IMG/VR virus record: IMGVR_UViG_3300019776_000324
Span: 124,001 to 188,000 of that record
Reading direction: 5' to 3' (one strand)
DNA: 64,000 nucleotides
Shown: one piece after another, positions 1 through 11,441 of the stretch
Position numbering within the stretch: position 1 is the stretch's first letter
Layout of the letters: each line of letters opens with the position of its first letter
The notes under the pieces: generated by a model
What the model was told of the DNA's origin: nothing
The model's input: the letters and a program-made list of their open reading frames with translations, nothing else
Databases searched by the model: none
Program-made: the position numbers and the translations under genes

Positions 1-1
1 A

Positions 2-178
2 ATCAAACCCAAAAGTCAAAGCATTATTGAAGATAAAATGAAGTCTAGAGATCGTGCTATTGTAGCAATTAACTACGCCAAGTGGGATGCTGCTCAAAAA
101 TGGGCCAAAGCAAACGGGCTACACTTTAGAATTATCACCGAAGATCAAATCTTCCATCAAGGCGGCAAGAAAAAGTAG
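2..178 (+). CDS. 3' end of head completion nuclease (T4 gp4-like, TnsA-type endonuclease), partial
   Basis: My translation from nt 2: IKPKSQ...AINYAKWDAAQKWAKANGLHFRIITEDQIF, stop TAG 176-178; matches the gp4 (E)IKP..Q / N.AKW.AA / F.I.TE pattern. Confidence 0.7.
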   Translation: MKPKSQSIIEDKMKSRDRAIVAINYAKWDAAQKWAKANGLHFRIITEDQIFHQGGKKK

Positions 179-194
179 TCAATCCAAATGCCGC

Positions 195-200
195 TAAATA
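195..200 (+). promoter_or_regulatory. Late promoter TAAATA, 4 nt upstream of ATG 205
   Basis: T4 late-promoter core; recurs upstream of many genes in the window. Confidence 0.6.
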
Positions 201-204
201 TGGT

Positions 205-708
205 ATGACAAAAAAATTAGAAGAAATTTTTGGTTTTAACGAGTTAGAAACAGAAGACACTGTGTCCGATGATGCTCCTAAAACCACGGAAGAAACTAAA
301 ACAGCCATAGTAGAAATTGATGCTACTATTGATAAAATTGATGCAGCTCTACCAGCTATCCGTGACTTAGATGCTAGTGATAACGAGCTAGACGAAATAG
401 CCGAAATGGCCAAAGAAAGCTACCAAAATTTATCAGATCTAGGATTCAATGTTGATAGTCGTTATGCTAGCGAGTTATTTGCTGTAGCAAGCACCATGCT
501 TGGACATGCACTAACAGCCAAGACTACTAAACTAAACAAAAAATTAAAAATGCTTGATCTACAAATGAAAAAACTTAAATTGGATCAAGATGCGGCAAAA
601 AATGCTCCAGAAGAGCCTCCTGTAGGCGAAGGACGAGTATTAAACACTATGAATCGCAATGAATTACTAGAACGCTTAATTGGGTCAAGAGACCAAAAAA
701 ACAATTAA
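205..708 (+). CDS. Helical protein, possible terminase small subunit (gp16-like)
   Basis: 167 aa, coiled-coil, ELFAVASTML..ALTAK segment; head/packaging neighbourhood; function weakly supported. Confidence 0.35.
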   Translation: MTKKLEEIFGFNELETEDTVSDDAPKTTEETKTAIVEIDATIDKIDAALPAIRDLDASDNELDEIAEMAKESYQNLSDLGFNVDSRYASELFAVASTMLGHALTAKTTKLNKKLKMLDLQMKKLKLDQDAAKNAPEEPPVGEGRVLNTMNRNELLERLIGSRDQKNN

Positions 709-734
709 GCATAAATATGATATAGGGAATTAAC

Positions 735-1343
735 ATGAAAAATTTTAAAGACTACCTCACCGAATCCGAGCGCACTTACAACTACAGAATTAAACTTGTA
801 GGTGACATACCTTCTACTCTTATTAAAGATTTAGAAGGTAAACTAAAGCAATTTGACATTGTCAAGATTTCTGCTCCAAAGACTACACCAGTTCAAACTA
901 ATCCTGCAGATTTTCCTGCATTTTCAAATGAGCGTGTAACACATGTGGATGTAGAATTCCGCTATCCAGCAATTGAACCACAAATTCAACAAATTGTACA
1001 ATTGTTAGGAGTTGATCCTAATTGTGTGCGTATGTTGACAACACCATACGAAGAAGGTATGAATGTTGAGCGTGACAAGATTGAAGATCAAAACAAAGAT
1101 TTGTTAGCTGATACAGATTACCCTGCACCAGATGCAGAACAAAAAGCTCTCAGCAAAGACTACTCAGCTGATCCATATCAGCATGCTGTATTGAAAAATG
1201 CTTACAAGAGTGACTTTACTGTAGCTGGTGGAAAGACACCTGCTGCACAAACAACAAACGATTTGCCAATGGGTAATACTAGTCCAATGACAAAGATGAC
1301 CCGCAAACCAAAACCAGCTACTGGTGCAAACCCAAAAGGATAA
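735..1343 (+). CDS. Hypothetical virion/internal head protein
   Basis: N-terminus MKNFKDYLTE resembles the T4 capsid-targeting sequence; TAAATA at 712-717. Confidence 0.45.
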   Translation: MKNFKDYLTESERTYNYRIKLVGDIPSTLIKDLEGKLKQFDIVKISAPKTTPVQTNPADFPAFSNERVTHVDVEFRYPAIEPQIQQIVQLLGVDPNCVRMLTTPYEEGMNVERDKIEDQNKDLLADTDYPAPDAEQKALSKDYSADPYQHAVLKNAYKSDFTVAGGKTPAAQTTNDLPMGNTSPMTKMTRKPKPATGANPKG

Positions 1344-1347
1344 CAAA

Positions 1348-3405
1348 ATGAGTTTTTTTTACGACCTAAACAAAAGATTAGCCGCATTGGCTAGCAAGCA
1401 AGATCAGCAACTTACTGAAAGTAAGGCCGCTGTTGAAGAAAGCAAGTTCAGTAAACTTGCTAAAGAGATTGGTAAAAATCCAAAGGTTAAAAATCCTGCA
1501 GCAGTTGCAGCCACAATTGGTCGTGAAAAGGATGGTCAAAAGGCCATGACTGCCAAGGCAGTTGCTGGTAAGAAAAAAGCCAATGAAGAAGAATTAGATG
1601 AAGCTGGTTACTCTGCTAAAGCTGGCCGTGCTGGTAAAGACTTAGGCAAGCCAGGCAAGAACTTTGCTAAGATTGCCAAAGGTGCTGCTGAGCGTTATGG
1701 CTCTAAAGAAGCTGGCGAGCGAGTTGCAGGCGCAGTACTAAATAAACTCCGTCATCCAAAAGAAGACATTGCCGATGAAGGCAACGCATTCACAGGCCAA
1801 TTAGCTAAGACACCAAAAGGTGGCAAGTTCAAAGTAGGCAACAAAGAATTTACAGATACAAGTAGTATTGAAGAAAGTGCATGCCCAACATGCGACTGTG
1901 CTCCATGCAAGTGCAACGAAGGTAATGCATTTACCGGCGCATTGGCCAAGACACCAAAGGGTGGCAAGTTCAAAGTAGGCAACAAAGAATTTACAGACAA
2001 CAGCGACCTTGAAGAAGGCTATGCTGAAATGGATGCATGGTTAAAGAGCCGCGAAAAAGAAAAAGGCACTGGCAAGTTCGATGTTAAAGACACAGGCTAT
2101 TCTAAGCGTTATACTCGTAAAGAAGAGCCAGAAGCATCTGATGACGAAGTTAGCACAGAACCTAAGCGTCGTGGTCGTCCAAAGGGTGCACCAAAAGGTC
2201 CAGAGCGTGTAACAGCCAAGAGCTACAAATATAAAGCAGGTCGTCCTGCTAAGACCAACGAAGGCGATGTTACTATTACTGATCGTGGTGAGTACGATGA
2301 CGAAGCGGGGATGGCAAAGGACTCTTTACATACTATCATGCGCCATGCTAAAGAACTTGAAAATGCTTTACACAGCAACGAGAACTTGCCTGAGTGGGTA
2401 CAAGAAAAAATTGGACAGATCAAAGGTATGATGTCCAGCGTTACTGATTACATTATCAGCACACACGAGCGTGGCATTGAACAAGCCACAGGTAAAGAAA
2501 GTATCACTATGCCTGTAGCTGAAAAAGCTGTAAGCAAAGCTCAACAAAAATTTATGGGCATGGTTCATGCCGCACAAAAAGGTGAAAAGCCAGCTAGTAA
2601 AGAAGTTGCTAAGGTAGCTAAAGAAATGCCTAAGAAGGCAGCTAAAGACTTTGCTAGTACTAAGCACAAAGGTTTGCCAGCTCATGTAGAAGAAGAATCT
2701 ACTGAGAAGGAAGATACTAAAGCTGAAAAAGCTGGTAAAAAAGTAGCCAAAGATATTGAACACGACGAAGGTCACAAAGCCAAAGGCGATAACAAAGCTG
2801 AAAAAGCTGGTAAGAAAGTTACCAAAGACATTGAGTACGATGACAAAAAAGACAAAGAAGAAAAAGTTGACGAAACAACAGTTGCTGGATCAGTAGCAAC
2901 AGCAACTACCAGTGGTAAGTCTAACAAGGGTGGCATGCAGTTTGGCAAAGGTGTTTACGAAAGTTTAGACCGTCAGTTTAAACAAGCATTAACAGAAAGT
3001 ATTTCCGTTGAATCGACAATGGGCGAATGCGGTGAAGGCGAAATGTCTCCAAGCATCACTATTACTGCTGATGGCGAAGAAGCTGCTAAGTTAATGATGT
3101 TGTTAAAGTTAGCCGGACTTGAAGGTCAATCTCCTGCAACATGCCCAACATGCGGCAGCGCACCTTGTGCTTGTGCTGAAGTAGTCGATGAGAACAGTCC
3201 AAATTGGCCAACCAACACTGAAGTTGGCGGCAAGAATGATCCGACTCTATCAACTTATGCAGGTGGCCTGAACAAACCTAAGTCAACAGGACAAACAACA
3301 ACTCCAACATTAGGAAGCGCAGATGTTCGTCGCCAAGTAAGTATGGAAGAGTCAGTTAAACTTGAGCGTAGCTTGTTCAATACTTGGAAAAATTATAAAG
3401 GTTAA
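1348..3405 (+). CDS. Modular Lys/Glu-rich prohead-core/internal-head polyprotein-like protein
   Basis: Probable start ATG 1348 after AAGGA; duplicated modules, AT-hook-like KRRGRPK, many (L/I/V)xE sites. Confidence 0.55.
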   Translation: MSFFYDLNKRLAALASKQDQQLTESKAAVEESKFSKLAKEIGKNPKVKNPAAVAATIGREKDGQKAMTAKAVAGKKKANEEELDEAGYSAKAGRAGKDLGKPGKNFAKIAKGAAERYGSKEAGERVAGAVLNKLRHPKEDIADEGNAFTGQLAKTPKGGKFKVGNKEFTDTSSIEESACPTCDCAPCKCNEGNAFTGALAKTPKGGKFKVGNKEFTDNSDLEEGYAEMDAWLKSREKEKGTGKFDVKDTGYSKRYTRKEEPEASDDEVSTEPKRRGRPKGAPKGPERVTAKSYKYKAGRPAKTNEGDVTITDRGEYDDEAGMAKDSLHTIMRHAKELENALHSNENLPEWVQEKIGQIKGMMSSVTDYIISTHERGIEQATGKESITMPVAEKAVSKAQQKFMGMVHAAQKGEKPASKEVAKVAKEMPKKAAKDFASTKHKGLPAHVEEESTEKEDTKAEKAGKKVAKDIEHDEGHKAKGDNKAEKAGKKVTKDIEYDDKKDKEEKVDETTVAGSVATATTSGKSNKGGMQFGKGVYESLDRQFKQALTESISVESTMGECGEGEMSPSITITADGEEAAKLMMLLKLAGLEGQSPATCPTCGSAPCACAEVVDENSPNWPTNTEVGGKNDPTLSTYAGGLNKPKSTGQTTTPTLGSADVRRQVSMEESVKLERSLFNTWKNYKG
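1777..1997 (+). repeat. Intragenic direct repeat, about 80 bp x2 (1777-1856, 1918-1997)
   Basis: Both copies encode EGNAFTG(Q/A)LAKTPKGGKFKVGNKEFTD; offset 141 nt. Confidence 0.9.
2719..2844 (+). repeat. Intragenic direct repeat x2 (starts 2719, 2794)
   Basis: KAEKAGKKV(A/T)KDIE(H/Y)D(E/D) twice; offset 75 nt. Confidence 0.85.
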
Positions 3406-3410
3406 TTAAA

Positions 3411-3893
3411 ATGAGTCAAGCCAATGTCTACACCTCAGTTGCAAATGCAGTATGGTATACTGATAAGTGCGAAATTGTTACAGGTAGTACTGCTGTAACC
3501 TACAACATCTATGTTATGCAAGCCGGTAATCCTACTGTAGGCATTTTAGGTTCAGTATCTAGTGCTAGTAATGTAATGATTTCAACCAATGCTAGTCAAG
3601 AGTTAATTGGCGCAACATTTGCCACAGGTACTGGTGTTGCCAATACAGTTACAGTGATCAGTGCAGTTAACGGACAAAGTCTTGTTATGAGTGCTAATGC
3701 AACTGCAAATAGTACAGGCCCATATACTTTAACCACAGGCAATCAAGGCAATTTATACAGTGCCGCACCACAAGTGGCAGTAAATAGTCGCCAACAAATT
3801 TATGTTGGTGCTGGTAACAAGCTAACAATTACAGGTAGCAGTTTTACCGCCAGAGAACTCGGAACAGCTAGCTCGGCCACAGCAGGACATTAA
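3411..3893 (+). CDS. Small beta-rich structural protein
   Basis: 160 aa, rich in Ala/Thr/Ser/Gly/Asn, late operon. Confidence 0.45.
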   Translation: MSQANVYTSVANAVWYTDKCEIVTGSTAVTYNIYVMQAGNPTVGILGSVSSASNVMISTNASQELIGATFATGTGVANTVTVISAVNGQSLVMSANATANSTGPYTLTTGNQGNLYSAAPQVAVNSRQQIYVGAGNKLTITGSSFTARELGTASSATAGH

Positions 3894-3895
3894 TT

Positions 3896-4276
3896 GTGCG
3901 AGCTCGTGAGTTTATTGCCGAAGGTACTAGAGGCGGATCCAGATCCTCCGCTTCCCATGAGTTTGAACGAGCACATCCAGGACTACTAACTCCAGGCGGC
4001 CAAGGTGATGTTTACTGGGGCCGTTACTATGATCACTATCGTGTAAGCAGTCTAGCAGGTATGCATCCAGATGATATTGATGCAGTAGACGAAATTAGTT
4101 TCTTTGGTAATCTTCCTTTGTTTAGTGCTTATACCGAGTATGATCGCAAAAAACTAAAAGCGATTATGAAAAAACTCAAAATGAAACCGCAAGAAAAAAT
4201 TTCAAACGGTAGTCAAGAAACCGACAATACTAATGCAGTAAGTCCAGTAAAGTCGTTTAAAGGCTACAAACGCTAA
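3896..4276 (+). CDS. Putative internal head protein, paralog 1
   Basis: Starts MRAREFIAE, ends SPVKSFKGYKR. Confidence 0.55.
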   Translation: MRAREFIAEGTRGGSRSSASHEFERAHPGLLTPGGQGDVYWGRYYDHYRVSSLAGMHPDDIDAVDEISFFGNLPLFSAYTEYDRKKLKAIMKKLKMKPQEKISNGSQETDNTNAVSPVKSFKGYKR

Positions 4277-4277
4277 C

Positions 4278-5153
4278 ATGTGTGTCATTGTTGCCAAATA
4301 CTTTGATGGTATTGGTTGGGCCGGTGCTAAAAACAGAGACCGCAACTATACCCCTGTATTAGATTTTATTGAAGACGAACAAGATGGTGTAGATCGTATG
4401 ATGATGCACGATCGGATCACAGGGTATAAAGAAGGAATTAACAGTCGCGGCGTTAGTATATTAAACACAAGTTTAGATGTGTACGACGACGAAAGTGAAA
4501 TAGAAGCTGGTACAGCTAAAACTAGTCCCGATGGCAGAACCATTGCCGAAGCATTGTTGAAAGACACAGCTCAAGAAGCAGTTCAAGTAATTATTGATAG
4601 AAAAATGGGCGGTTGTACTATTGTATTTGATCGTGATAATCTGTTTTTAATTGAAGCCAGCGACTGGGATAGAAAAAAGCCCTACAGATATGTTGCTAAA
4701 CGAATCCCTAAAACAGAAACTTTAGCCAGAACCAATCACGGCATCTGGATACCTAATGCAGGCTATCAACGCAACCCTGAAAACAAAAGCCAAACACTAA
4801 GCAGAATTAGTAGCGAATCAAGATTAGCGCAAGCTGAAGCAGTGGTTACTGCTGCACAAGATCCAGAGGATTTAGTTGATGGATTATGTCAAGTCTACAT
4901 CAATGATCCACAGCTAAATATAATGCGTACCAGTACAGAACGAAAGAAAATGCGTACAACTAGTCAGCAGTTGTGTGTTCCTAAAGAGAGAACACTATAT
5001 TGCCGTCCAGTTAGTAGTCATTTAGAATTTGATTTTTGGTCACTTAATCGTCCTAATACCAATGTATGGGTTGAGATATTAAGTAACCGTGCTCTATGGC
5101 AGAACACCAAAGGTGATCCGCCATTTGGCCATATGAACATGAAAGATTATTAA
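4278..5153 (+). CDS. N-terminal-nucleophile (Ntn) cysteine hydrolase (C45/NRDE-like)
   Basis: Cys2 after Met, AKNRDR, EGIN..GV, RTNH motifs. Confidence 0.7.
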   Translation: MCVIVAKYFDGIGWAGAKNRDRNYTPVLDFIEDEQDGVDRMMMHDRITGYKEGINSRGVSILNTSLDVYDDESEIEAGTAKTSPDGRTIAEALLKDTAQEAVQVIIDRKMGGCTIVFDRDNLFLIEASDWDRKKPYRYVAKRIPKTETLARTNHGIWIPNAGYQRNPENKSQTLSRISSESRLAQAEAVVTAAQDPEDLVDGLCQVYINDPQLNIMRTSTERKKMRTTSQQLCVPKERTLYCRPVSSHLEFDFWSLNRPNTNVWVEILSNRALWQNTKGDPPFGHMNMKDY

Positions 5154-5551
5154 TGAGAGCAGTGGAATTTATTACCGAAGCAAAATATGGCAGTGCTGCC
5201 GATGTTCCGGCCAATGCTAAAAAATTGCCAAACCACCAAGCCACTGCTATCAAGGGTGCTATCAGCATGCCTGACATTAGTATGACCAAGCAAGGCGGCA
5301 GTCCTTATACACAATGGCGATTTGGTATTGCCATGGCCGGTGCACCTGACTATCCTACACCAGCTGCTGGCGCATTTGCCGGCGATCCACTGTTGGCAAC
5401 TTACAGCGATGCTGACTTAGAAATTATTAATTCAGCCGCTAAGATGGTTGGCGCAGGTGAAGTTAAAAAGCTCACTGATAATCGTAGTACTGAACACGAT
5501 GCAATTTATAAAACAAGTCCGGTTACTGCATTCAAAGGATACAAGCGATGA
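5153..5551 (+). CDS. Putative internal head protein, paralog 2
   Basis: Starts MRAVEFITE, core YTQWRFGIAMAGA, ends SPVTAFKGYKR. Confidence 0.55.
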   Translation: MRAVEFITEAKYGSAADVPANAKKLPNHQATAIKGAISMPDISMTKQGGSPYTQWRFGIAMAGAPDYPTPAAGAFAGDPLLATYSDADLEIINSAAKMVGAGEVKKLTDNRSTEHDAIYKTSPVTAFKGYKR

Positions 5552-5949
5552 GAGCCAAAGAATTTATTCGAGAAGACATTGACGGCCGAACAGGTTCGAT
5601 AACATTTGATGTAGCTCGTGCGTTGCCTGGTGCATTTAAGATTCCTGCACTTAAAAATCAAGATCCATATTTACAATATCGTTTTGGTGTGGCTATTGCT
5701 GGCGCCAAAGGGGCTGCTCAACGCAAAAAAGATGGCGTTCCGGCATTTGACGGCAAAGAAAGTCCGTTTGGCGAAAACGAAATAGTAGTAAGTTACGATC
5801 CGCATGTAGTGGATTATATACACGATGCTCTTAAGTCCATGGGCATGCCCCCTAGTGATGCTATTCAAGTAGGTTCAATGAAAAGCGAAGAAATGCCGGA
5901 AGTAGTAAAAGTAAGCCCAGTAAAGGCATTTAAAGGTTATTCAAGATAA
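5548..5949 (+). CDS. Putative internal head protein, paralog 3
   Basis: Starts MRAKEFIRE, core YLQYRFGVAIAGA, ends SPVKAFKGYSR. Confidence 0.55.
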   Translation: MRAKEFIREDIDGRTGSITFDVARALPGAFKIPALKNQDPYLQYRFGVAIAGAKGAAQRKKDGVPAFDGKESPFGENEIVVSYDPHVVDYIHDALKSMGMPPSDAIQVGSMKSEEMPEVVKVSPVKAFKGYSR

Positions 5950-5950
5950 A

Positions 5951-6661
5951 ATGAAAAAAATATTTGCAGTATTATTGTTTGCTCCACTTGTAGCACTAGC
6001 ACAAATCAACCAACAGTGTCCACAGTTTACAGCCAATGGCACACCACAATATCAAGCACAGCCAGGCGATCAAGAAATTTGCCATACAAACTATGCAGTA
6101 ATTCACAAGTGTAGTGTTAAGGCTCCGGTGGCAGTATTTGAACATTTAACAGTGGCCGCAATGACGGGCCCAAGCAAGCGTAAAGACAACTTCCGTCCTG
6201 ATCCACTGGTATATCCAGATTGCAGTGCTACCTTAGCTGACTATGCTACTGTAGGCCGCACACACGATCGTGGACATATGGCTCCTGCAGGTAACAACAC
6301 ACAGAATGATGCTATTATGTCAGAGTCATTCTTCCTGAGTAACATGGTAGCGCAAGTGGCCAACAACAATCGTGGCATTTGGAAGCAATTAGAAACTTGG
6401 GAGCGCCAATGGGCAGCTAATACAGGCACTGACTTTTACATTATCTCTGGTGGTATCTACGATCCAGGACATCCTGTAACTGGTAACGGCTTAGGTATCC
6501 CTACACGCTTATACAAGATCATTATTGAAAAGAACAGTAAGAATGTACAAGCATACCTAATGCCAAATGCTCCGCTACCTGTAGCAGATTTACCAAAATA
6601 TCAAACCACAATGACCGCTGTAGAACAAGCCACAGGCATGCGTTTTAATTTAGGGCAGTAA
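5951..6661 (+). CDS. DNA/RNA non-specific endonuclease (NucA/EndoG family) with signal peptide
   Basis: DRGHMAPA, SF.LSNM..Q...NRG.W..LE; N-terminal MKKIFAVLLFAPLVALA. Confidence 0.9.
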   Translation: MKKIFAVLLFAPLVALAQINQQCPQFTANGTPQYQAQPGDQEICHTNYAVIHKCSVKAPVAVFEHLTVAAMTGPSKRKDNFRPDPLVYPDCSATLADYATVGRTHDRGHMAPAGNNTQNDAIMSESFFLSNMVAQVANNNRGIWKQLETWERQWAANTGTDFYIISGGIYDPGHPVTGNGLGIPTRLYKIIIEKNSKNVQAYLMPNAPLPVADLPKYQTTMTAVEQATGMRFNLGQ

Positions 6662-6684
6662 TCAAACTGGCCATAAATTAATAT

Positions 6685-8250
6685 ATGGCTCAAGATGTAT
6701 CAACCTTAATTAAAACACCGTATAAAAATACGGCATTTACTAACGAACAACTTGAAGAATTCTTAAGGTGCGCAGACCCTGATACGGGTCCTGAGTACTT
6801 TATGGATCATTTCTTTCACATACAACATCCTACTAAAGGTAAAATGTTGTATCATCCTTTTGAGTATCAAAAGAGACTGATTGATACCTATCACAAATAT
6901 CGTTTCAGCATATCAATGATGCCTCGACAAACAGGTAAGAGTACCAGTGCCGCAGGTTACTTGTTATGGTACGCGATGTTTGTGCCGGACAGTACTATTC
7001 TTATTGCTGCTCACAAGTACACAGGTTCTCAAGAGATCATGCAACGAATTAGATACGCATACGAACTATGCCCAGATCACATTCGTGCAGGCGTTACCAG
7101 TTACAACAAAGGTAACTTAGACTTTGAAAATGGTAGCCGTATTGTGTCAGCAACAACTACTGAAAACACAGGACGCGGTATGTCCATATCCTTACTCTAC
7201 GCTGACGAGTTTGCATTCGTTCGTCCCGGTATTGCCAAAGAATTCTGGACTTCTATCAGCCCTACACTAGCAACTGGTGGTAAGGCAATTATTACAAGTA
7301 CACCAAACAGTGACGAAGATCAATTTGCGTTGTTGTGGAAGGGTGCTCTCAAGTGCGAAGATGAGTACGGTAATCCTACAGAAGTAGGCGTCAACGGATT
7401 TAAGTCTTATCGTAGTTACTGGAACGAACATCCTGACCGCGACGAAGCATGGGCCACAGCACAACGAGCACAGCTAGGTGAAGATCGTTTCCGTCGTGAG
7501 ATGGGTTGCGAATTTATTATTAACGATGAAACACTTATTGCTCCTGCTAAGTTAATTGATTTGCAAGGACACGAGCCCTTGTATAAAACTGGGCAAGTGC
7601 GTTGGTATCAAAAGCCCAAAGAAGGGCGCACCTATGTAGTATCGTTGGACCCTAGTCTTGGCACAGGAGGTGATGCAGCTGCCATACAGGTATTTGAAGC
7701 CAATACAACAGAACAAGTAGCAGAGTGGCGTCATAATCGTACACCCATTCCAGAACAAATTAGAATTCTAGCAGACATCTGCAACCATATCAACGAAACA
7801 GTAAACGATATCAAAAGCATCTATTTCAGCGTGGAAAATAACACCATTGGTGAAGCAGCCTTGATCAGTATTGCTGAATACGGCGAAGAAAACATCAAGG
7901 GCTATTTCCTAAGCGAACCAAACGGTGGCGGCAGTCGTAGATATCGCAAAGGTTTTAATACCAGCAACAAGCCCAAACTATCAGCTTGTAATAAACTTAA
8001 AACTTTGATAGAATCTGGAAAAATGAAAATTCGTAGCGCAGGGCTTGTTTCAGAGCTTAAAACTTTTGTAGCAAGCGGAGCTGGATTTGCCGCTAAACCT
8101 GGCGAAACTGACGACTTAGTAATGGCCACTGTACTAAACATCCGTATGCTACAACTGCTACAAACTTACGATACTGGCATTGATAATCAAATGCGAGATC
8201 ACGGGGATATTATAATTGCCCCGATGCCGTTCATATCAGTAATGCGCTAA
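6685..8250 (+). CDS. terL: Terminase large subunit (T4 gp17-like)
   Basis: PRQTGKS Walker A, YADEFAF Walker B, ITSTPN, nuclease DPS.G.GGD and DDLVMA. Confidence 0.95.
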   Translation: MAQDVSTLIKTPYKNTAFTNEQLEEFLRCADPDTGPEYFMDHFFHIQHPTKGKMLYHPFEYQKRLIDTYHKYRFSISMMPRQTGKSTSAAGYLLWYAMFVPDSTILIAAHKYTGSQEIMQRIRYAYELCPDHIRAGVTSYNKGNLDFENGSRIVSATTTENTGRGMSISLLYADEFAFVRPGIAKEFWTSISPTLATGGKAIITSTPNSDEDQFALLWKGALKCEDEYGNPTEVGVNGFKSYRSYWNEHPDRDEAWATAQRAQLGEDRFRREMGCEFIINDETLIAPAKLIDLQGHEPLYKTGQVRWYQKPKEGRTYVVSLDPSLGTGGDAAAIQVFEANTTEQVAEWRHNRTPIPEQIRILADICNHINETVNDIKSIYFSVENNTIGEAALISIAEYGEENIKGYFLSEPNGGGSRRYRKGFNTSNKPKLSACNKLKTLIESGKMKIRSAGLVSELKTFVASGAGFAAKPGETDDLVMATVLNIRMLQLLQTYDTGIDNQMRDHGDIIIAPMPFISVMR

Positions 8251-8254
8251 ATAC

Positions 8255-10282
8255 ATGACTATGTCAACACAAACGCCTTCTAAACAACTATTTGATCTAC
8301 TAGTTAGTAGAGATTTTGATCCTGAAATGCTGGATGTTCAGGGCAAACCTGCTCCAGATCCTAGCAAGGCTGAACTTTTTAACTTTGATTTCCGTGCAGA
8401 TTCTGGCAAAGATTACGGTACTGTAGTAATCATGTTGGGCGATGACAATAATCTTGAAGTTTACTTTGGCGACAATGTAGGTCGTACAATGGAAGGCCAA
8501 GACAAGAATGACTGGTATCAGTTTTTACAACAACTAAAGCATTTTGCAGTTAAGAACTTCATGAGCTTTAGTCCAAAAAATCTTAATCGCTTGCGTTACA
8601 GTATGCAAGGACAAGCAGCAATCAAAGAAGGCCTGTTTGAATCATGGACAGGCACAAAGACACAAAGCTGGAACGGCAAGCAAACAGAAGCTCGCTTGAT
8701 GATCAAGCATAAAAAGACTCTAGGCGAGAACGATGCTCGCTATCGTTACATTGAAAGTTTGTTTATTGAAACAGCCGAAGGTGAACGCTACAAGTTACCA
8801 TTTACTAAACTATCAGGTGGTCGTGCCATGGTAGAACATGTACGCAATGGTGGCAAGCCATACGACATTCGCGGAAATCATATTGCAGAAATAGTTGAAG
8901 AACTAAATGTACTAAGTCGTTTCAAGCGAGCTAACCAAGGTAAAATCTTTGAAGGCGACACAGCACAGTTAGTAGAGCAGACTAATGCTTATTACGAAAC
9001 AGCACAGAAAACATTAAAGAGTCTGAGCACCAACAAAGGATATACAAATTATTTTGAGTCATGGAATCCAGCAGAGATTACTGAACAAGAAGTAGTTATT
9101 GAAGGGTTAAAACATTTATTTGTGACACAAAGTATTGACACAAGAATTGAGTCAGCGTTACCCTTGCTGGCCAAAATACAACAACAAGGAAACGCTATGA
9201 AAGAAGCTAACATATTTGAAGCATGGGCAGATCGCCTGATGGAAGGTACATGGCAATTGCCAGACACACCAGAGAAACAAAACAAGTTAATTGAACTAAT
9301 GAGTCAAGACTTGCCAGTTGGTGCTGATGCTACTAATGCTACAGAACAATTGTATGATCTAATCGGTGATGACGAATTATTTGATCAATTGGAAGCACTT
9401 GCTGACCGTGACGCTAACGCTGATGCTCGTCAAGTCATCTATGATCGATTACAACAATTAAGTGATCATCCTGAAGTATTAAAAGTGGTTAACAGTTTAA
9501 ATATTGATGCTGATGTAGAAATGAATCCGCCCGAAGCTACTAACCCAGCTGACCTGCAACCAATGAATGAAAGTCGTTTAATGGATGCTACTGGTGAAAC
9601 TATCGAACACATTTTAAATCGTTTCAAGCACGAAGTTAAGACATTTGAACAAGGCGGTGACCTAGACGAAGACCTATATCACGCCCTATTTGACTATTGG
9701 AATGATGCCGGCGAGATTCCTTATGGTGTACAAAAGGCTCGCACAGGTGATCCATACGAGTGGGTAGCAAGCAATTTAGAAAGTCATTTACAAGGTGGCG
9801 GTATTGTTGGCGGCAATCCAGATGAAGATTATATGGATGAAACAGTTAAAGATCCAATGACTCAAACTGAAGATCCAGCTAACACACAACAACCAGAGTA
9901 TCCAGAATATCAGGATGACCTAGCTGGTATTCTTAAAACAGCTGGAGTTCCTGCTGTAGTGCAACCAGCACCAAACTATGAAACCGGTGACCTAGAAGAA
10001 GCAATCCCAACTACACTTGAGAATGAAGAAGAAACAGATGAAGGCGTAATTGGTTCTATAGCTGGTGCCGCATTAGGTGCAATGACACCAGTTCCAGGCG
10101 GCGCACTAATTGGTAGTCTGGCAGGCGATGCTATTCAAGACGAATTGTCAGATGAAGAAGAAACAGACGAAGACACAAGTCCATTGGCTGGTAAGTATGG
10201 ACACAGTGGCAAAATGAAAGCAGTATCCAAAGACTTGTCGTTCTTGGATCGTTTGAAAGAACTTTCAGGATTGAAGAAGTAA
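8255..10282 (+). CDS. Large hypothetical protein with acidic C-terminus and glycine-zipper-like segment
   Basis: 675 aa ORF; TAAATA at 8248-8253; GSIAGAALG...GALIGSLAG near the C-terminus. Confidence 0.6.
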   Translation: MTMSTQTPSKQLFDLLVSRDFDPEMLDVQGKPAPDPSKAELFNFDFRADSGKDYGTVVIMLGDDNNLEVYFGDNVGRTMEGQDKNDWYQFLQQLKHFAVKNFMSFSPKNLNRLRYSMQGQAAIKEGLFESWTGTKTQSWNGKQTEARLMIKHKKTLGENDARYRYIESLFIETAEGERYKLPFTKLSGGRAMVEHVRNGGKPYDIRGNHIAEIVEELNVLSRFKRANQGKIFEGDTAQLVEQTNAYYETAQKTLKSLSTNKGYTNYFESWNPAEITEQEVVIEGLKHLFVTQSIDTRIESALPLLAKIQQQGNAMKEANIFEAWADRLMEGTWQLPDTPEKQNKLIELMSQDLPVGADATNATEQLYDLIGDDELFDQLEALADRDANADARQVIYDRLQQLSDHPEVLKVVNSLNIDADVEMNPPEATNPADLQPMNESRLMDATGETIEHILNRFKHEVKTFEQGGDLDEDLYHALFDYWNDAGEIPYGVQKARTGDPYEWVASNLESHLQGGGIVGGNPDEDYMDETVKDPMTQTEDPANTQQPEYPEYQDDLAGILKTAGVPAVVQPAPNYETGDLEEAIPTTLENEEETDEGVIGSIAGAALGAMTPVPGGALIGSLAGDAIQDELSDEEETDEDTSPLAGKYGHSGKMKAVSKDLSFLDRLKELSGLKK

Positions 10283-10317
10283 TTTAACAGTTAGAACAAC
10301 CGCGTCATAAATATTCG

Positions 10318-10346
10318 TTGACGCTAAGGAAATAAGCGTGTACACT
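10318..10346 (+). promoter_or_regulatory. Sigma70-like promoter for gp32
   Basis: TTGACG (10318-23), 17 nt, TACACT (10341-46). Confidence 0.55.
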
Positions 10347-10373
10347 ACAACAGTGAATACGCTTTTTTCTTTT
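10334..10373 (+). terminator. Intrinsic terminator overlapping the gp32 promoter
   Basis: AAGCGTGTACACT-ACAAC-AGTGAATACGCTT stem followed by a T-rich run. Confidence 0.6.
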
Positions 10374-10380
10374 GTATCAC

Positions 10381-10440
10381 AGGCAACTTAAATCTATACA
10401 TTAGATAGGCAACACATTTTAGACAACTTAGAAAGGCAAC
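10381..10440 (+). repeat. Four AG(G/A)CAAC repeats in the gp32 leader
   Basis: Copies at 10381, 10407, 10421, 10434; the last overlaps the SD. Confidence 0.8.
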
Positions 10441-10445
10441 TAAAA

Positions 10446-11441
10446 ATGGCATCATTAGCAGAAATTCGCGCTCGTCTAGCCGCTAGCGAATCAAAACAAG
10501 GCGGTAGTAATCAATCCACAGGTGGTGATAACGCAATTTACCCACATTGGAATATGGAAGAAGGTCAAGCAGCAACACTTCGATTCCTCCCAGATGGTAA
10601 TACAAAAAATACATTCTTTTGGCAAGAACGCCAAATGATTCGCTTACCATTCAATGGTATCAAAGGCGAAATGGATTCAAAACAAGTTTATGTACAAGTA
10701 CCTTGTGTGGAAATGTGGCAAGAGACTTGCCCAGTCCTTACAGAAGTGCGTGGCTGGTTTAAAGACAAGAGCTTGGAAGAAATGGGTCGTAAGTACTGGA
10801 AAAAGCGTAGTTACATTTTCCAAGGGTTTGTTCGTGAGAACCCACTTGGCGACGACAGAACTCCGGCTAATCCAATTCGTCGTTTCATCATTGGTCCTCA
10901 AATCTTTACTACTATCAAATCAGCATTAATGGATCCAGAGTTGGAAGAATTGCCAACAGACTTAATGCGTGGTTTAGATTTCCGTATCACCAAAGGTGCC
11001 AAAGGTGGCTTTGCTGACTACAGCGGATCTAAGTGGGCCCGTAAAGAAACAGCACTTACAGAAGCTGAACAAGCAGCTATCGCTGAACATGGTTTGTTTG
11101 ATCTTTCAACATTCTTACCTAAGAAACCAACCGAAGCAGAAGTTCGAGTAATTAAAGAAATGTTCGAAGCTTCAGTTGACGGTCAGAGTTATGATACAGA
11201 TCGTTGGGGTCAATACTTCCGTCCAGCTGGTGTTAGTGCTCCTGCTGGCTCTAGTGCTCCGGCAACAGAAAGTGCTCCAGCACCACAAGTATCTGCTCCA
11301 GCACCGGTAGCAACATCAAGTGATTTTGATGATGAAGAACCAGCTGTAGCAACTGCTCCTGTAGCAACTCCAGCAAGTGGCGAACCTAAACAAAATGCTC
11401 AAGACATTTTGGCTATGATTCGTAGTCGTCAAAAGCAGTAA
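10446..11441 (+). CDS. gp32: Single-stranded DNA-binding protein (T4 gp32-like)
   Basis: LRFLPD, CPV, YWKKRSY, G.DF.I.K, Y..SKW, acidic/Pro-Ala tail; upstream of uvsX. Confidence 0.85.
   Translation: MASLAEIRARLAASESKQGGSNQSTGGDNAIYPHWNMEEGQAATLRFLPDGNTKNTFFWQERQMIRLPFNGIKGEMDSKQVYVQVPCVEMWQETCPVLTEVRGWFKDKSLEEMGRKYWKKRSYIFQGFVRENPLGDDRTPANPIRRFIIGPQIFTTIKSALMDPELEELPTDLMRGLDFRITKGAKGGFADYSGSKWARKETALTEAEQAAIAEHGLFDLSTFLPKKPTEAEVRVIKEMFEASVDGQSYDTDRWGQYFRPAGVSAPAGSSAPATESAPAPQVSAPAPVATSSDFDDEEPAVATAPVATPASGEPKQNAQDILAMIRSRQKQ

What the first reader, a model, noticed from the sequence alone, without database searches (positions are those of the whole stretch)
3896..5949. Three capsid-targeted paralogs bracketing an Ntn cysteine hydrolase
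Seen: three 126-133-aa paralogs share an N-terminal MRAxEFIxE, a central Y..(Y/W)R...(L/M/I)AG core and a near-invariant C-terminal SPVxxFKGYxR. They are translationally coupled around a 291-aa Ntn hydrolase with Cys2. Established: T4 internal proteins use an MKTYQEFIAE-type leader that directs packaging and is removed by the prohead protease after Glu, and IPI is an injected anti-restriction factor. Inference: a co-packaged, injected effector family with a shared C-terminal docking or modification tag, possibly acted on by (or partnering) the Ntn enzyme. I do not recognise this cassette as described.
Basis: partly seen in the sequence, partly recalled or inferred. Interest (0 to 1): 0.75.

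Follow-up and report, generated by a model that had tools for sequence, protein, structure and literature searches.

The report
Phage internal-protein array plus Ntn amidase
An uncultured 344-kb freshwater jumbo phage carries three copies of a new small protein family whose first nine residues look like phage T4's capsid-targeting, protease-removed leader. A cysteine Ntn amidase gene sits among them, but it proves to be an independent, clade-specific insertion and not their partner.

Summary
Three paralogs (126, 132 and 133 aa) share an MRAxEFIxE start, a Y..YR core and an SPVxxFKGYxR end. They flank a 291-aa protein whose Cys2 aligns with the nucleophile of solved Cys-Ntn amidases (Z about 20).

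The capsid-targeting reading is well supported but indirect:
- The leader matches T4 IPII/IPIII (MKTYQEFIAE) and ends in the gp21 site L/I-x-E.
- The genome encodes a gp21-type (S77) prohead protease.
- At least three unrelated proteins in the genome carry the same leader.
- The leader is the most conserved segment of a family with 445 representatives.

The proposed paralog-Ntn partnership is not supported:
- 54 of 79 related loci have the paralog array without the Ntn gene.
- Two complete relatives lack the Ntn gene anywhere in the genome.
- Chryseobacterium phage MA9V-1 has the Ntn gene but no paralogs.
- The FKGY tag persists where the Ntn gene is absent.

A new finding concerns distant Ntn homologs. 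In 79 of 119, the catalytic Cys follows a short propeptide that always ends [LIVM]-x-E, and some propeptides resemble the T4 IPI leader. These look like zymogens that the prohead protease would activate.

In other phages the paralog domain is fused to Acb1, HicA, GNAT, nucleotidyltransferase and metallopeptidase-like modules. I found no virion or biochemical data and no published description.

The parts
735..1343 (+). g202, a 202-aa virion-protein homolog that starts the conserved block; N-terminus MKNFKDYLTE is leader-like
   Evidence: phrog_14802 'virion structural protein', E 2e-4. Its PA5oct homolog EST35_0202 is annotated as a structural protein by ESI-MS/MS. The leader motif was found. 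The gene is conserved upstream of the array in relatives.
1324..3405 (+). g693, a 693-aa repeat-rich protein with a DUF3008 segment, conserved upstream of the array
   Evidence: synteny. No similarity to the PA5oct protein in the same position.
3411..3893 (+). g160, a Ser/Thr/Ala-rich 160-aa protein immediately upstream of the first paralog
   Evidence: synteny.
3896..4276 (+). PAR1, internal-protein-like paralog (126 aa, GTG start). Predicted leader 3896-3922 (MRAREFIAE); C-terminal motif 4241-4273 (SPVKSFKGYKR)
4278..5153 (+). Cys-Ntn amidase (291 aa). Nucleophile Cys2 codon at 4281-4283. Conserved, low-confidence C-terminal tail at residues 271-291
5153..5551 (+). PAR2 (132 aa). Leader 5153-5179 (MRAVEFITE); C-terminal motif 5516-5548
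5548..5949 (+). PAR3 (133 aa). Leader 5548-5574 (MRAKEFIRE); C-terminal motif 5914-5946. This slot is the most variable among relatives
5951..6661 (+). Non-specific DNA/RNA endonuclease with an N-terminal signal-peptide-like segment. A neighbour that is variably present; not shown to belong to the system
   Evidence: PF01223, E 6e-38; phrog_14168; synteny.
6685..8250 (+). Large terminase subunit, the downstream anchor of the slot
   Evidence: PF03237/PF17289; phrog_36964, E 1e-114.

Best explanation
The three paralogs belong to a previously unnamed family of phage head-internal proteins, functional analogues of the T4 internal proteins. Each is made late with a 9-residue N-terminal leader (MRAxEFIxE). 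By analogy with the T4 capsid-targeting sequence, the leader would dock the protein onto the scaffolding core of the prohead. The phage's gp21-type (S77) prohead protease would then cut it off after Glu9 (site I-x-E). That leaves a mature protein of about 115-125 residues inside the head, which would leave the capsid with the DNA at infection. The mature domain (Y..YR core, invariant S-x-E, S-P-V and a basic aromatic C-terminus) is a reusable cargo or carrier module. In other phages it is fused to enzymes such as Acb1, HicA, GNAT, nucleotidyltransferase and HExxH peptidase-like domains. In every relative it stands as a tandem array of 1-4 copies just upstream of the terminase gene, and one slot turns over rapidly. 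The Ntn gene is a separate element, inserted into this array in one subclade only. It encodes a catalytically plausible Cys-Ntn amidase, and the family itself appears to be head cargo. In its distant homologs the nucleophile Cys is masked by a propeptide ending [LIVM]-x-E, so the prohead protease would create the active N-terminus. In the window's clade the propeptide is absent (M-C), so removal of the initiator Met would be enough. Shown here: the sequence and structure facts, the phyletic patterns and the presence of the protease. Inferred: packaging, cleavage, ejection and the amidase's substrate.
For: Leader: it is identical in its core to T4 IPII/IPIII (EFIAE). hhalign aligns only this segment. 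The gp21 motif L/I-x-E and the 10-residue CTS are established (PMC9026906 and PMC3012670). An S77 protease is present in this genome (82 bits) and in 3 of 3 relatives tested. The MCP and scaffold N-termini carry L-x-E sites. The leader also occurs on g202, on a 183-aa DUF6321-like protein and on a 663-aa protein with three GNAT-like motifs, none of which matches the paralog profile. The leader is the best-conserved segment (mean top-residue frequency 0.77, against 0.32 in the flanks) and is present in 184 of 188 distinct array members. Synonymous codons differ between the copies. Array: it is conserved between g160 and TerL in about 100 loci, and the third slot is only 35-45% identical in many close relatives. 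Fusions: Acb1 (E 1e-25), HicA, DUF6321, DUF3008, GNAT, cytidylyltransferase-like and M78/HExxH-like domains. Ntn: the fold and nucleophile alignment; invariant C2, N19, R20, D21, N153 and R217; a propeptide in 79 of 119 distant homologs, with P1 = E in 79/79 and P3 = L/I/V/M in 79/79, against 40 that start M|C. The longest propeptides (MKTFKELTS...EFLNE|C) resemble T4 IPI (MKTFKEFTS...ITE|A). MA9V-1 carries both Ntn and an S77 domain. Independence of the two modules.
Against: There are no virion proteomics, N-terminal sequences or expression data for this phage or any relative that carries the family. No cultured phage has the paralogs. The mature domain has no detectable homology to T4 IPs, no Pfam or PHROG match and no structural neighbour, so its function is inferred from context only. 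L/I-x-E is a very short motif. The mature proteins are only mildly basic (pI 6.9-9.3). Ntn propeptides could be removed autocatalytically, as in other Ntn hydrolases. The window's own Ntn protein has no leader, so its packaging is unsupported. The array lies next to the terminase gene and replication genes, not in the main head module at genome 86-96 kb.
Confidence: 0.55

Rival explanations
1. The paralogs and the Ntn enzyme form one functional unit. Either the shared C-terminal SPVxxFKGYxR tag is a docking or modification site acted on by the Ntn amidase, or a paralog acts as an adaptor that carries the leaderless Ntn enzyme into the prohead.
For: The order PAR-Ntn-PAR-PAR, with overlapping or abutting stop and start codons, is conserved in all relatives with Ntn identity of 64% or more. 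A PAR1-type copy is always immediately upstream of Ntn when Ntn is present. The window's Ntn lacks a leader of its own and has a conserved disordered C-terminal tail that could be a docking motif.
Against: 54 of 79 loci found from the paralog side lack Ntn. Two 99-100% complete relatives have paralogs and the protease but no Ntn anywhere. MA9V-1 has Ntn but no paralog. The FKGY tag is kept in Ntn-less loci (59 of 85 by a strict pattern, plus near-variants). In some loci Ntn follows all the paralogs. Close synteny among relatives at 64% identity or more can be simple inheritance.
Confidence: 0.1
2. The paralogs are prohead core or scaffold-accessory proteins, like T4 gp67/gp68. They would be targeted and cleaved by the protease but serve assembly only. 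They would be degraded or expelled before DNA packaging and not delivered to the host.
For: They occupy a conserved position beside the virion and packaging genes in every relative. They carry an invariant S-x-E about 18 residues from the C-terminus, which resembles the S/A-x-E sites used by phiKZ-type proteases (PMC9026906) and could be a second cleavage site. The fold is mostly coil with short helices.
Against: Copy number and sequence turn over quickly (1-4 copies; one slot is 35-45% identical between close relatives), which is unusual for assembly parts. The domain is fused to enzymes with host-directed or anti-defence roles (Acb1, HicA, GNAT), which fits delivered cargo better. The sites inferred for this protease have hydrophobic P3, not Ser.
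Confidence: 0.2
3. The MRAxEFIxE start is not a capsid-targeting signal. It would be a common N-terminal module kept for another reason (translation initiation, stability or a shared cytoplasmic interaction), and both the paralogs and the Ntn enzyme act in the infected cell's cytoplasm as ordinary accessory genes.
For: Many other proteins in this phage group begin M-R/K-x-x-E/D-L/F without a clean I-x-E (for example MRLKEFEQKG on a ParB-like protein; MRLQELQP and MRLPEIQAP on fusion proteins). One fusion protein keeps a decayed leader internally (P0160). There is no direct evidence of packaging.
Against: E9 is nearly invariant (at least 90%) across 72 diverse members and I/V at P3 is strongly preferred, as a cleavage site requires. 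The core is identical to the experimentally defined T4 CTS. An S77 protease co-occurs in every genome tested. Codon usage in the leader is not conserved, which argues against an RNA-level signal.
Confidence: 0.15

Closest known systems
Phage T4 internal proteins IPI, IPII and IPIII and their capsid-targeting sequence (CTS)
   Same: Small proteins with a 10-19-residue N-terminal leader (MKTYQEFIAE in IPII/IPIII) ending in L/I-x-E, the gp21 cleavage site. Several divergent copies occur per genome and the loci are variable. The genome encodes a gp21-family protease (PMC3012670, PMC9026906).
   Different: There is no detectable homology beyond the leader. The leader here is 9 residues and starts MRA. 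The copies form a tandem array next to the terminase gene. There is a strongly conserved C-terminal segment (S-x-E ... SPV..FKGY.R) that T4 IPs lack. No function such as IPI*'s anti-GmrSD activity has been shown.
T4 Alt and the phiKZ/SPN3US inner-body and ejection proteins (enzymes packaged in the head and processed by the prohead protease)
   Same: Enzymes or large proteins are loaded into the prohead and trimmed after Glu by a gp21-related protease, sometimes at both termini (PMC9026906). The distant Ntn homologs and the PAR-enzyme fusions fit this pattern.
   Different: In the Ntn case the cut would create the catalytic residue itself (the N-terminal Cys). To my knowledge this has not been described for Alt or the phiKZ proteins. 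No proteomic evidence exists here.
Cys-Ntn amidases: NAAA, acid ceramidase, acyl-CoA:isopenicillin N acyltransferase (MEROPS C45), bile-salt hydrolase / penicillin V acylase (C59), and CV2077 (PDB 3gvz)
   Same: The same alpha-beta-beta-alpha fold at Z 16-20. Residue 2 superposes on the nucleophile Cys of each. An N-R-D motif lies around residue 20, and invariant Asn and Arg lie further along. The M-C start is as in BSH.
   Different: Sequence identity is 10-16%. There is no PDB hit by sequence or profile. The Pfam AAT hit is below threshold. The family is phage-specific, with more than 1,600 metagenomic members. The substrate is unknown. Where a propeptide is present, it looks like a prohead-protease site and not the Gly-Cys type of self-cleavage site.
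Phage P1 Dar system (head-packaged anti-restriction proteins)
   Same: A set of proteins loaded into the head in a defined way and delivered with the DNA to counter host defence (PMC12810830 and PMC9024508, listed).
   Different: No sequence relationship was tested or expected. The P1 loading hierarchy is not leader- and protease-based in the T4 manner. This is an analogy only.

Membership tests
T4-type CTS-bearing internal head proteins | Short N-terminal leader ending in the gp21 site L/I-x-E and resembling MKTYQEFIAE | tested here: met
   MRAREFIAE, MRAVEFITE and MRAKEFIRE against T4 IPII/IPIII MKTYQEFIAE. hhalign aligns exactly this segment.
T4-type CTS-bearing internal head proteins | The genome encodes a gp21-family (Peptidase_S77) prohead protease | tested here: met
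   PF03420, 82.2 bits, at genome 89271-89714. Also found in 3 of 3 relatives.
T4-type CTS-bearing internal head proteins | Homology of the mature protein to T4 IPI, IPII or IPIII | tested here: not met
   hhalign probability below 6% outside the leader. No PHROG or Pfam hit.
T4-type CTS-bearing internal head proteins | Presence in virions, with the leader removed after Glu | not testable with these tools
   No cultured phage carries the family. No proteomic data were found.
T4-type CTS-bearing internal head proteins | Ejection into the host and a host-directed activity | not testable with these tools
   The only indirect hints are domain fusions to Acb1, HicA, GNAT and NTase domains in other phages.
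Cys-Ntn hydrolase superfamily | Four-layer alpha-beta-beta-alpha Ntn fold | tested here: met
   AF2 pTM 0.84. Foldseek E down to 2e-8. VIA-align Z up to 20.2 over about 200-220 residues.
Cys-Ntn hydrolase superfamily | The nucleophile Cys becomes residue 1 of the mature chain and superposes on the known nucleophile | tested here: met
   Cys2 is invariant. Model residue 2 aligns to NAAA C126, AAT C103, acid ceramidase C143 and BSH C2. 118 of 120 close homologs start M-C.
Cys-Ntn hydrolase superfamily | Supporting catalytic residues (Arg/Asp near residue 20, an oxyanion Asn, a distal Arg) | tested here: inconclusive
   Invariant N19, R20, D21, R22, N153 and R217 sit at plausible places. I did not check residue-by-residue structural equivalence.
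Pfam AAT (PF03417, MEROPS C45) | Score above the Pfam gathering threshold | tested here: not met
   17.9 bits against a 23.2 cutoff, E 0.0025. A few homologs carry a precomputed PF03417 hit. It is best treated as a separate phage family within the superfamily.
   25 of 79 loci have both and 54 have paralogs only. Two complete genomes lack Ntn. MA9V-1 has Ntn only.

The most novel reading that the evidence does not exclude
A phage prohead protease serves as the activating enzyme of a packaged Ntn zymogen. In many jumbo phages the Cys-Ntn amidase is made with a CTS-like propeptide ending [LIVM]-x-E directly before the catalytic Cys. The enzyme would therefore gain its N-terminal nucleophile only inside the maturing head, and would be delivered, already armed, into the next host together with a new family of internal carrier proteins. 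The window's clade would be a derived state in which the lock has been lost (M-C start).
Probability: 0.4. Interest if true: 0.75.

Novelty: new variant of a known kind. Interest (0 to 1): 0.55.

Why it matters
Proteins packaged in the head and ejected with the DNA are a phage's first line of action in a new host, but outside T4, P1 and the phiKZ group few are known. This locus points to three things:
- a large protein family (445 cluster representatives at 50% identity), so far unannotated, that carries a T4-like targeting leader in uncultured freshwater jumbo phages;
- evidence that the family's domain is reused as a module on anti-defence and other enzymes, including Acb1;
- a phage-specific Cys-Ntn amidase family whose propeptide suggests that head maturation is coupled to enzyme activation.

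If confirmed, the leader would extend the T4 protein-packaging principle to a distant phage group. It would also give a simple sequence rule for predicting head cargo in metagenomic phage genomes.

Tried and rejected
- Complex prediction of Ntn with PAR1: score 0.00 and no verdict, so it counts neither for nor against binding.
- Structure searches with the PAR3 model found nothing. Foldseek against PDB gave a best E of 3.7. The ESM Atlas shape search gave TM of 0.31 or less. The atlas feature search scored 0.82 or less, with unnamed viral clusters only.
- Pfam and PHROGs on the three paralogs gave no hit.
- tblastn of PAR3 against 50,697 phage records gave no hit.
- PDB searches with the Ntn protein, by sequence and by profile, gave only noise.
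It was repeated with the 3-sequence alignment.
- I considered a programmed frameshift fusing PAR1 to Ntn. I rejected it because the stop-to-start spacing differs between orthologs (-1, +1 and +2 nt).
- I considered whether the FKGY codons (AAAGG) serve only as a ribosome-binding site for the next gene. I rejected this because the spacing is 8 or 14 nt, the codons vary, and the motif is kept in last-in-array copies.
- I considered a RiPP-like leader/core system with Ntn as the peptidase. I rejected it because Ntn is absent from most arrays.
- The promoter and terminator scan was uninformative: no plus-strand terminator in 1-10500 and promoter counts at background.
- g693 shows no similarity to the PA5oct protein in the same position.
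- Sequencing-run search returned only freshwater DNA metagenomes holding small parts of the stretch, and no RNA run. I did not lay reads.
Full report
**Context.** The window is bases 124001-188000 of a 344,244-bp viral contig with direct terminal repeats, rated complete. Its terminase is distantly related to those of jumbo phages PA5oct, Vibrio phage 2.275.O, Atu_ph07 and CBB. Public runs that hold parts of the stretch are freshwater metagenomes.

**Observation.**
- The three small proteins are 28-32% identical.
- MRAxEFIxE is invariant at the start and SPVxxFKGYxR at the end, with a Y..(Y/W)R...AG core.
- The motifs are unique to these genes within the window, and a profile finds only these three copies in the genome.
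- Stop and start codons abut or overlap throughout.
- The family is real and large. The three-sequence profile retrieves 445 representatives of 50%-identity clusters at E<=1e-3.

**The Ntn protein.**
- Pfam gives only a sub-threshold AAT hit, and PDB sequence searches give nothing.
- An AlphaFold model built on 57 homologs is confident (pTM 0.84).
- Foldseek and VIA-align place it firmly among Cys-Ntn amidases: CV2077, NAAA, AAT, acid ceramidase, BSH/PVA and C69 dipeptidase, at Z 16-20.
- Model residue 2 superposes on the nucleophile Cys of each of these enzymes.
- C2, N19, R20, D21, N153 and R217 are invariant across homologs down to 28% identity.
- The nearest solved relatives hydrolyse non-peptide amide bonds (N-acyl lipids, bile salts, penicillin V). 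The substrate here is unknown.

**The leader.** I translated T4 ipII, ipIII and ipI from the T4 record.
- IPII and IPIII start MKTYQEFIAE. IPI starts MKTFKEFTS...ITE.
- PAR1's MRAREFIAE shares EFIAE with them.
- The published gp21 site is L/I-x-E, and the first 10 residues of IPIII suffice for encapsidation (PMC9026906; PMC3012670).
- This genome encodes a Peptidase_S77 (gp21-type) protease beside its portal, scaffold and major capsid genes. The capsid and scaffold N-termini contain L-x-E sites.
- A scan of all ORFs finds the leader pattern at the start of only six credible proteins: the three paralogs, g202, a 183-aa DUF6321-like protein and a 663-aa protein with three GNAT-like motifs. g202's PA5oct homolog is a mass-spectrometry-confirmed structural protein.
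- My rough estimate of chance matches for the whole genome is well under one.
- Within a 72-member alignment the leader is the best-conserved segment (0.77, against 0.32 for neighbouring regions).
- The three copies use different synonymous codons for the leader, so selection acts on the peptide.
- Beyond the leader the paralogs are not homologous to T4 IPs. They work like CTS-bearing internal proteins but are not members of any T4 IP family.

**Linkage between the paralogs and the Ntn gene.**
- Starting from the Ntn protein, 22 viral loci (64-87% identity) all show PAR-Ntn-PAR-PAR within the block g202, g693, g160 ... nuclease, TerL.
- Starting from the paralogs, the picture changes. Of 79 loci, 25 have Ntn and 54 have tandem paralogs only, in the same slot upstream of TerL.
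- Two relatives rated 99-100% complete have paralogs and an S77 protease but no Ntn anywhere.
- The only cultured phages with an Ntn homolog, Chryseobacterium phages MA9V-1 and MA9V-2 (34% identity), are different. MA9V-1 has an S77 domain but no paralog.
- In some loci Ntn follows all the paralogs and does not sit between them.
- The FKGY tail is retained where Ntn is absent.
- PA5oct has the g202 homolog and TerL but none of the paralogs, Ntn or nuclease between them.
- I conclude that the paralog array is the older feature of this slot and that the Ntn gene was inserted into it in one subclade.
- A complex prediction gave no verdict.

**An unexpected point about the Ntn family.** I examined 119 homologs gathered around the MA9V-1 protein.
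- 40 begin M-C.
- 79 have a propeptide of 3-21 residues before the Cys.
- In all 79 the residue before the Cys is Glu, and the residue two positions earlier is L, I, V or M.
- That is the gp21-type site placed exactly where cleavage would expose the nucleophile.
- The longest propeptides (MKTFKELTS...EFLNE|C) closely resemble the T4 IPI leader.
- I infer that these enzymes are head cargo and zymogens armed by the prohead protease.
- Autocatalytic removal, which is usual for Ntn hydrolases, cannot be excluded.
- In the window's clade 118 of 120 homologs start M-C, so removal of the initiator Met should suffice, as in BSH. These proteins instead share a conserved, low-confidence C-terminal tail whose role is unknown.

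**The paralog domain.**
- The model is confident (pLDDT 84) but mostly coil with short helices. It has no structural neighbour.
- Besides the leader, the family conserves Y..YR, an invariant S-x-E about 18 residues from the end, S-P, and a basic aromatic terminus. The terminus is either FKGYxR or KRNKYG[VI].
- In other phages the domain is fused to several modules: Acb1 (anti-CBASS, E 1e-25), HicA, DUF6321, DUF3008, GNAT plus an HExxH module, cytidylyltransferase-like enzymes, and M78-like peptidases. It sometimes occurs in two copies in one protein.
- Those fusion genes sit elsewhere in their genomes, not next to an Ntn gene.
- Orthologous slots evolve unevenly. PAR1 is 57-83% identical and PAR2 73-86%, while the third slot is often 35-45% identical among close relatives. 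This recalls the plasticity of T4 IP loci (PMC3012670).
- I read the domain as an internal-protein or carrier module. That step is inference.

**Novelty and verdict.**
- I found no description of the paralog family, of the cassette, or of prohead-protease-gated Ntn enzymes in Pfam, PHROGs, cultured phage records or the searchable literature.
- The principle of a CTS plus gp21-type processing is known. The protein family, its modular use and the Ntn zymogen logic appear to be new variants of it.
- The capsid-targeting inference is plausible and now better founded.
- The Ntn partnership is not supported.
- All functional steps await virion proteomics and protease assays.

Noticed in passing
window 5951-6661 (+): A DNA/RNA non-specific endonuclease (PF01223, E 6e-38) with a signal-peptide-like N-terminus (MKKIFAVLLFAPLVALAQ). 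This is unusual for a phage nuclease because it suggests export to the periplasm. It is variably present between the paralog array and TerL in relatives, in two size classes (about 236 aa and about 271 aa).
   Followed up: partly
genome G000:C1:278846-281385 (L031 2847-5386), outside the window: Two adjacent genes carry the same leader type. One is a 183-aa DUF6321-like basic protein (MRASDFITEA). The other is a 663-aa protein (MRFKEFVTEY) with three GNAT-like Y-R-G-x-G motifs. Both are candidates for further head cargo. A nearby 120-aa ParB-like protein starts MRLKEFEQKG but has no I-x-E.
   Followed up: partly
P0256 (268 aa, metagenomic): A natural fusion of the paralog domain (residues about 9-114, leader-like start MKLSDLFE) with a full Acb1 anti-CBASS phosphodiesterase domain (PF23474, E 1e-25). 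This suggests that some phages may deliver Acb1 pre-packaged.
   Followed up: partly
window 5088-5150 (Ntn residues 271-291): The last 21 or so residues of the Ntn protein are modelled with pLDDT below 50, yet they are conserved across the clade (..DPPFGHMNMKD[IVLY]). They could be a short linear docking motif that replaces the lost N-terminal propeptide.
   Followed up: no
window 1324-3405 (+): g693 contains a direct protein repeat (EGNAFTG.LAKTPKGGKFKVGNKEFTD, twice), two Cys-rich motifs (CPTCDCAPCKC and CPTCGSAPCAC), a DUF3008 segment and long Lys/Glu-rich tracts. Its length varies from 486 to 1202 aa among relatives.
   Followed up: no
L027/L029 (Chryseobacterium phage MA9V-1, record 126501-130544): In MA9V-1 the S77 prohead-protease domain lies inside a very long open frame of 1349 aa, annotated 'prohead core protein serine protease'. 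The protease is therefore fused to a large extra region.
   Followed up: no
L114 (Pseudomonas phage PA5oct 124500-131500): PA5oct shares the gene order homolog-of-window-2..178, homolog-of-205..708, g202 homolog, one large structural protein, then TerL. It has nothing in the slot where this phage carries g160, the paralogs, Ntn and the nuclease. That slot therefore looks like an insertion hot spot.
   Followed up: partly
window 8255-10282 (+) and 10446-32385: The 675-aa protein after TerL matches only a 'virion structural protein' PHROG (E 2e-9) and is not the portal. The true portal, protease, scaffold and capsid genes lie at genome 86-92 kb. Downstream of this protein the window switches to T4-like replication genes: a gp32-like SSB, UvsX and helicases.
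   Followed up: partly
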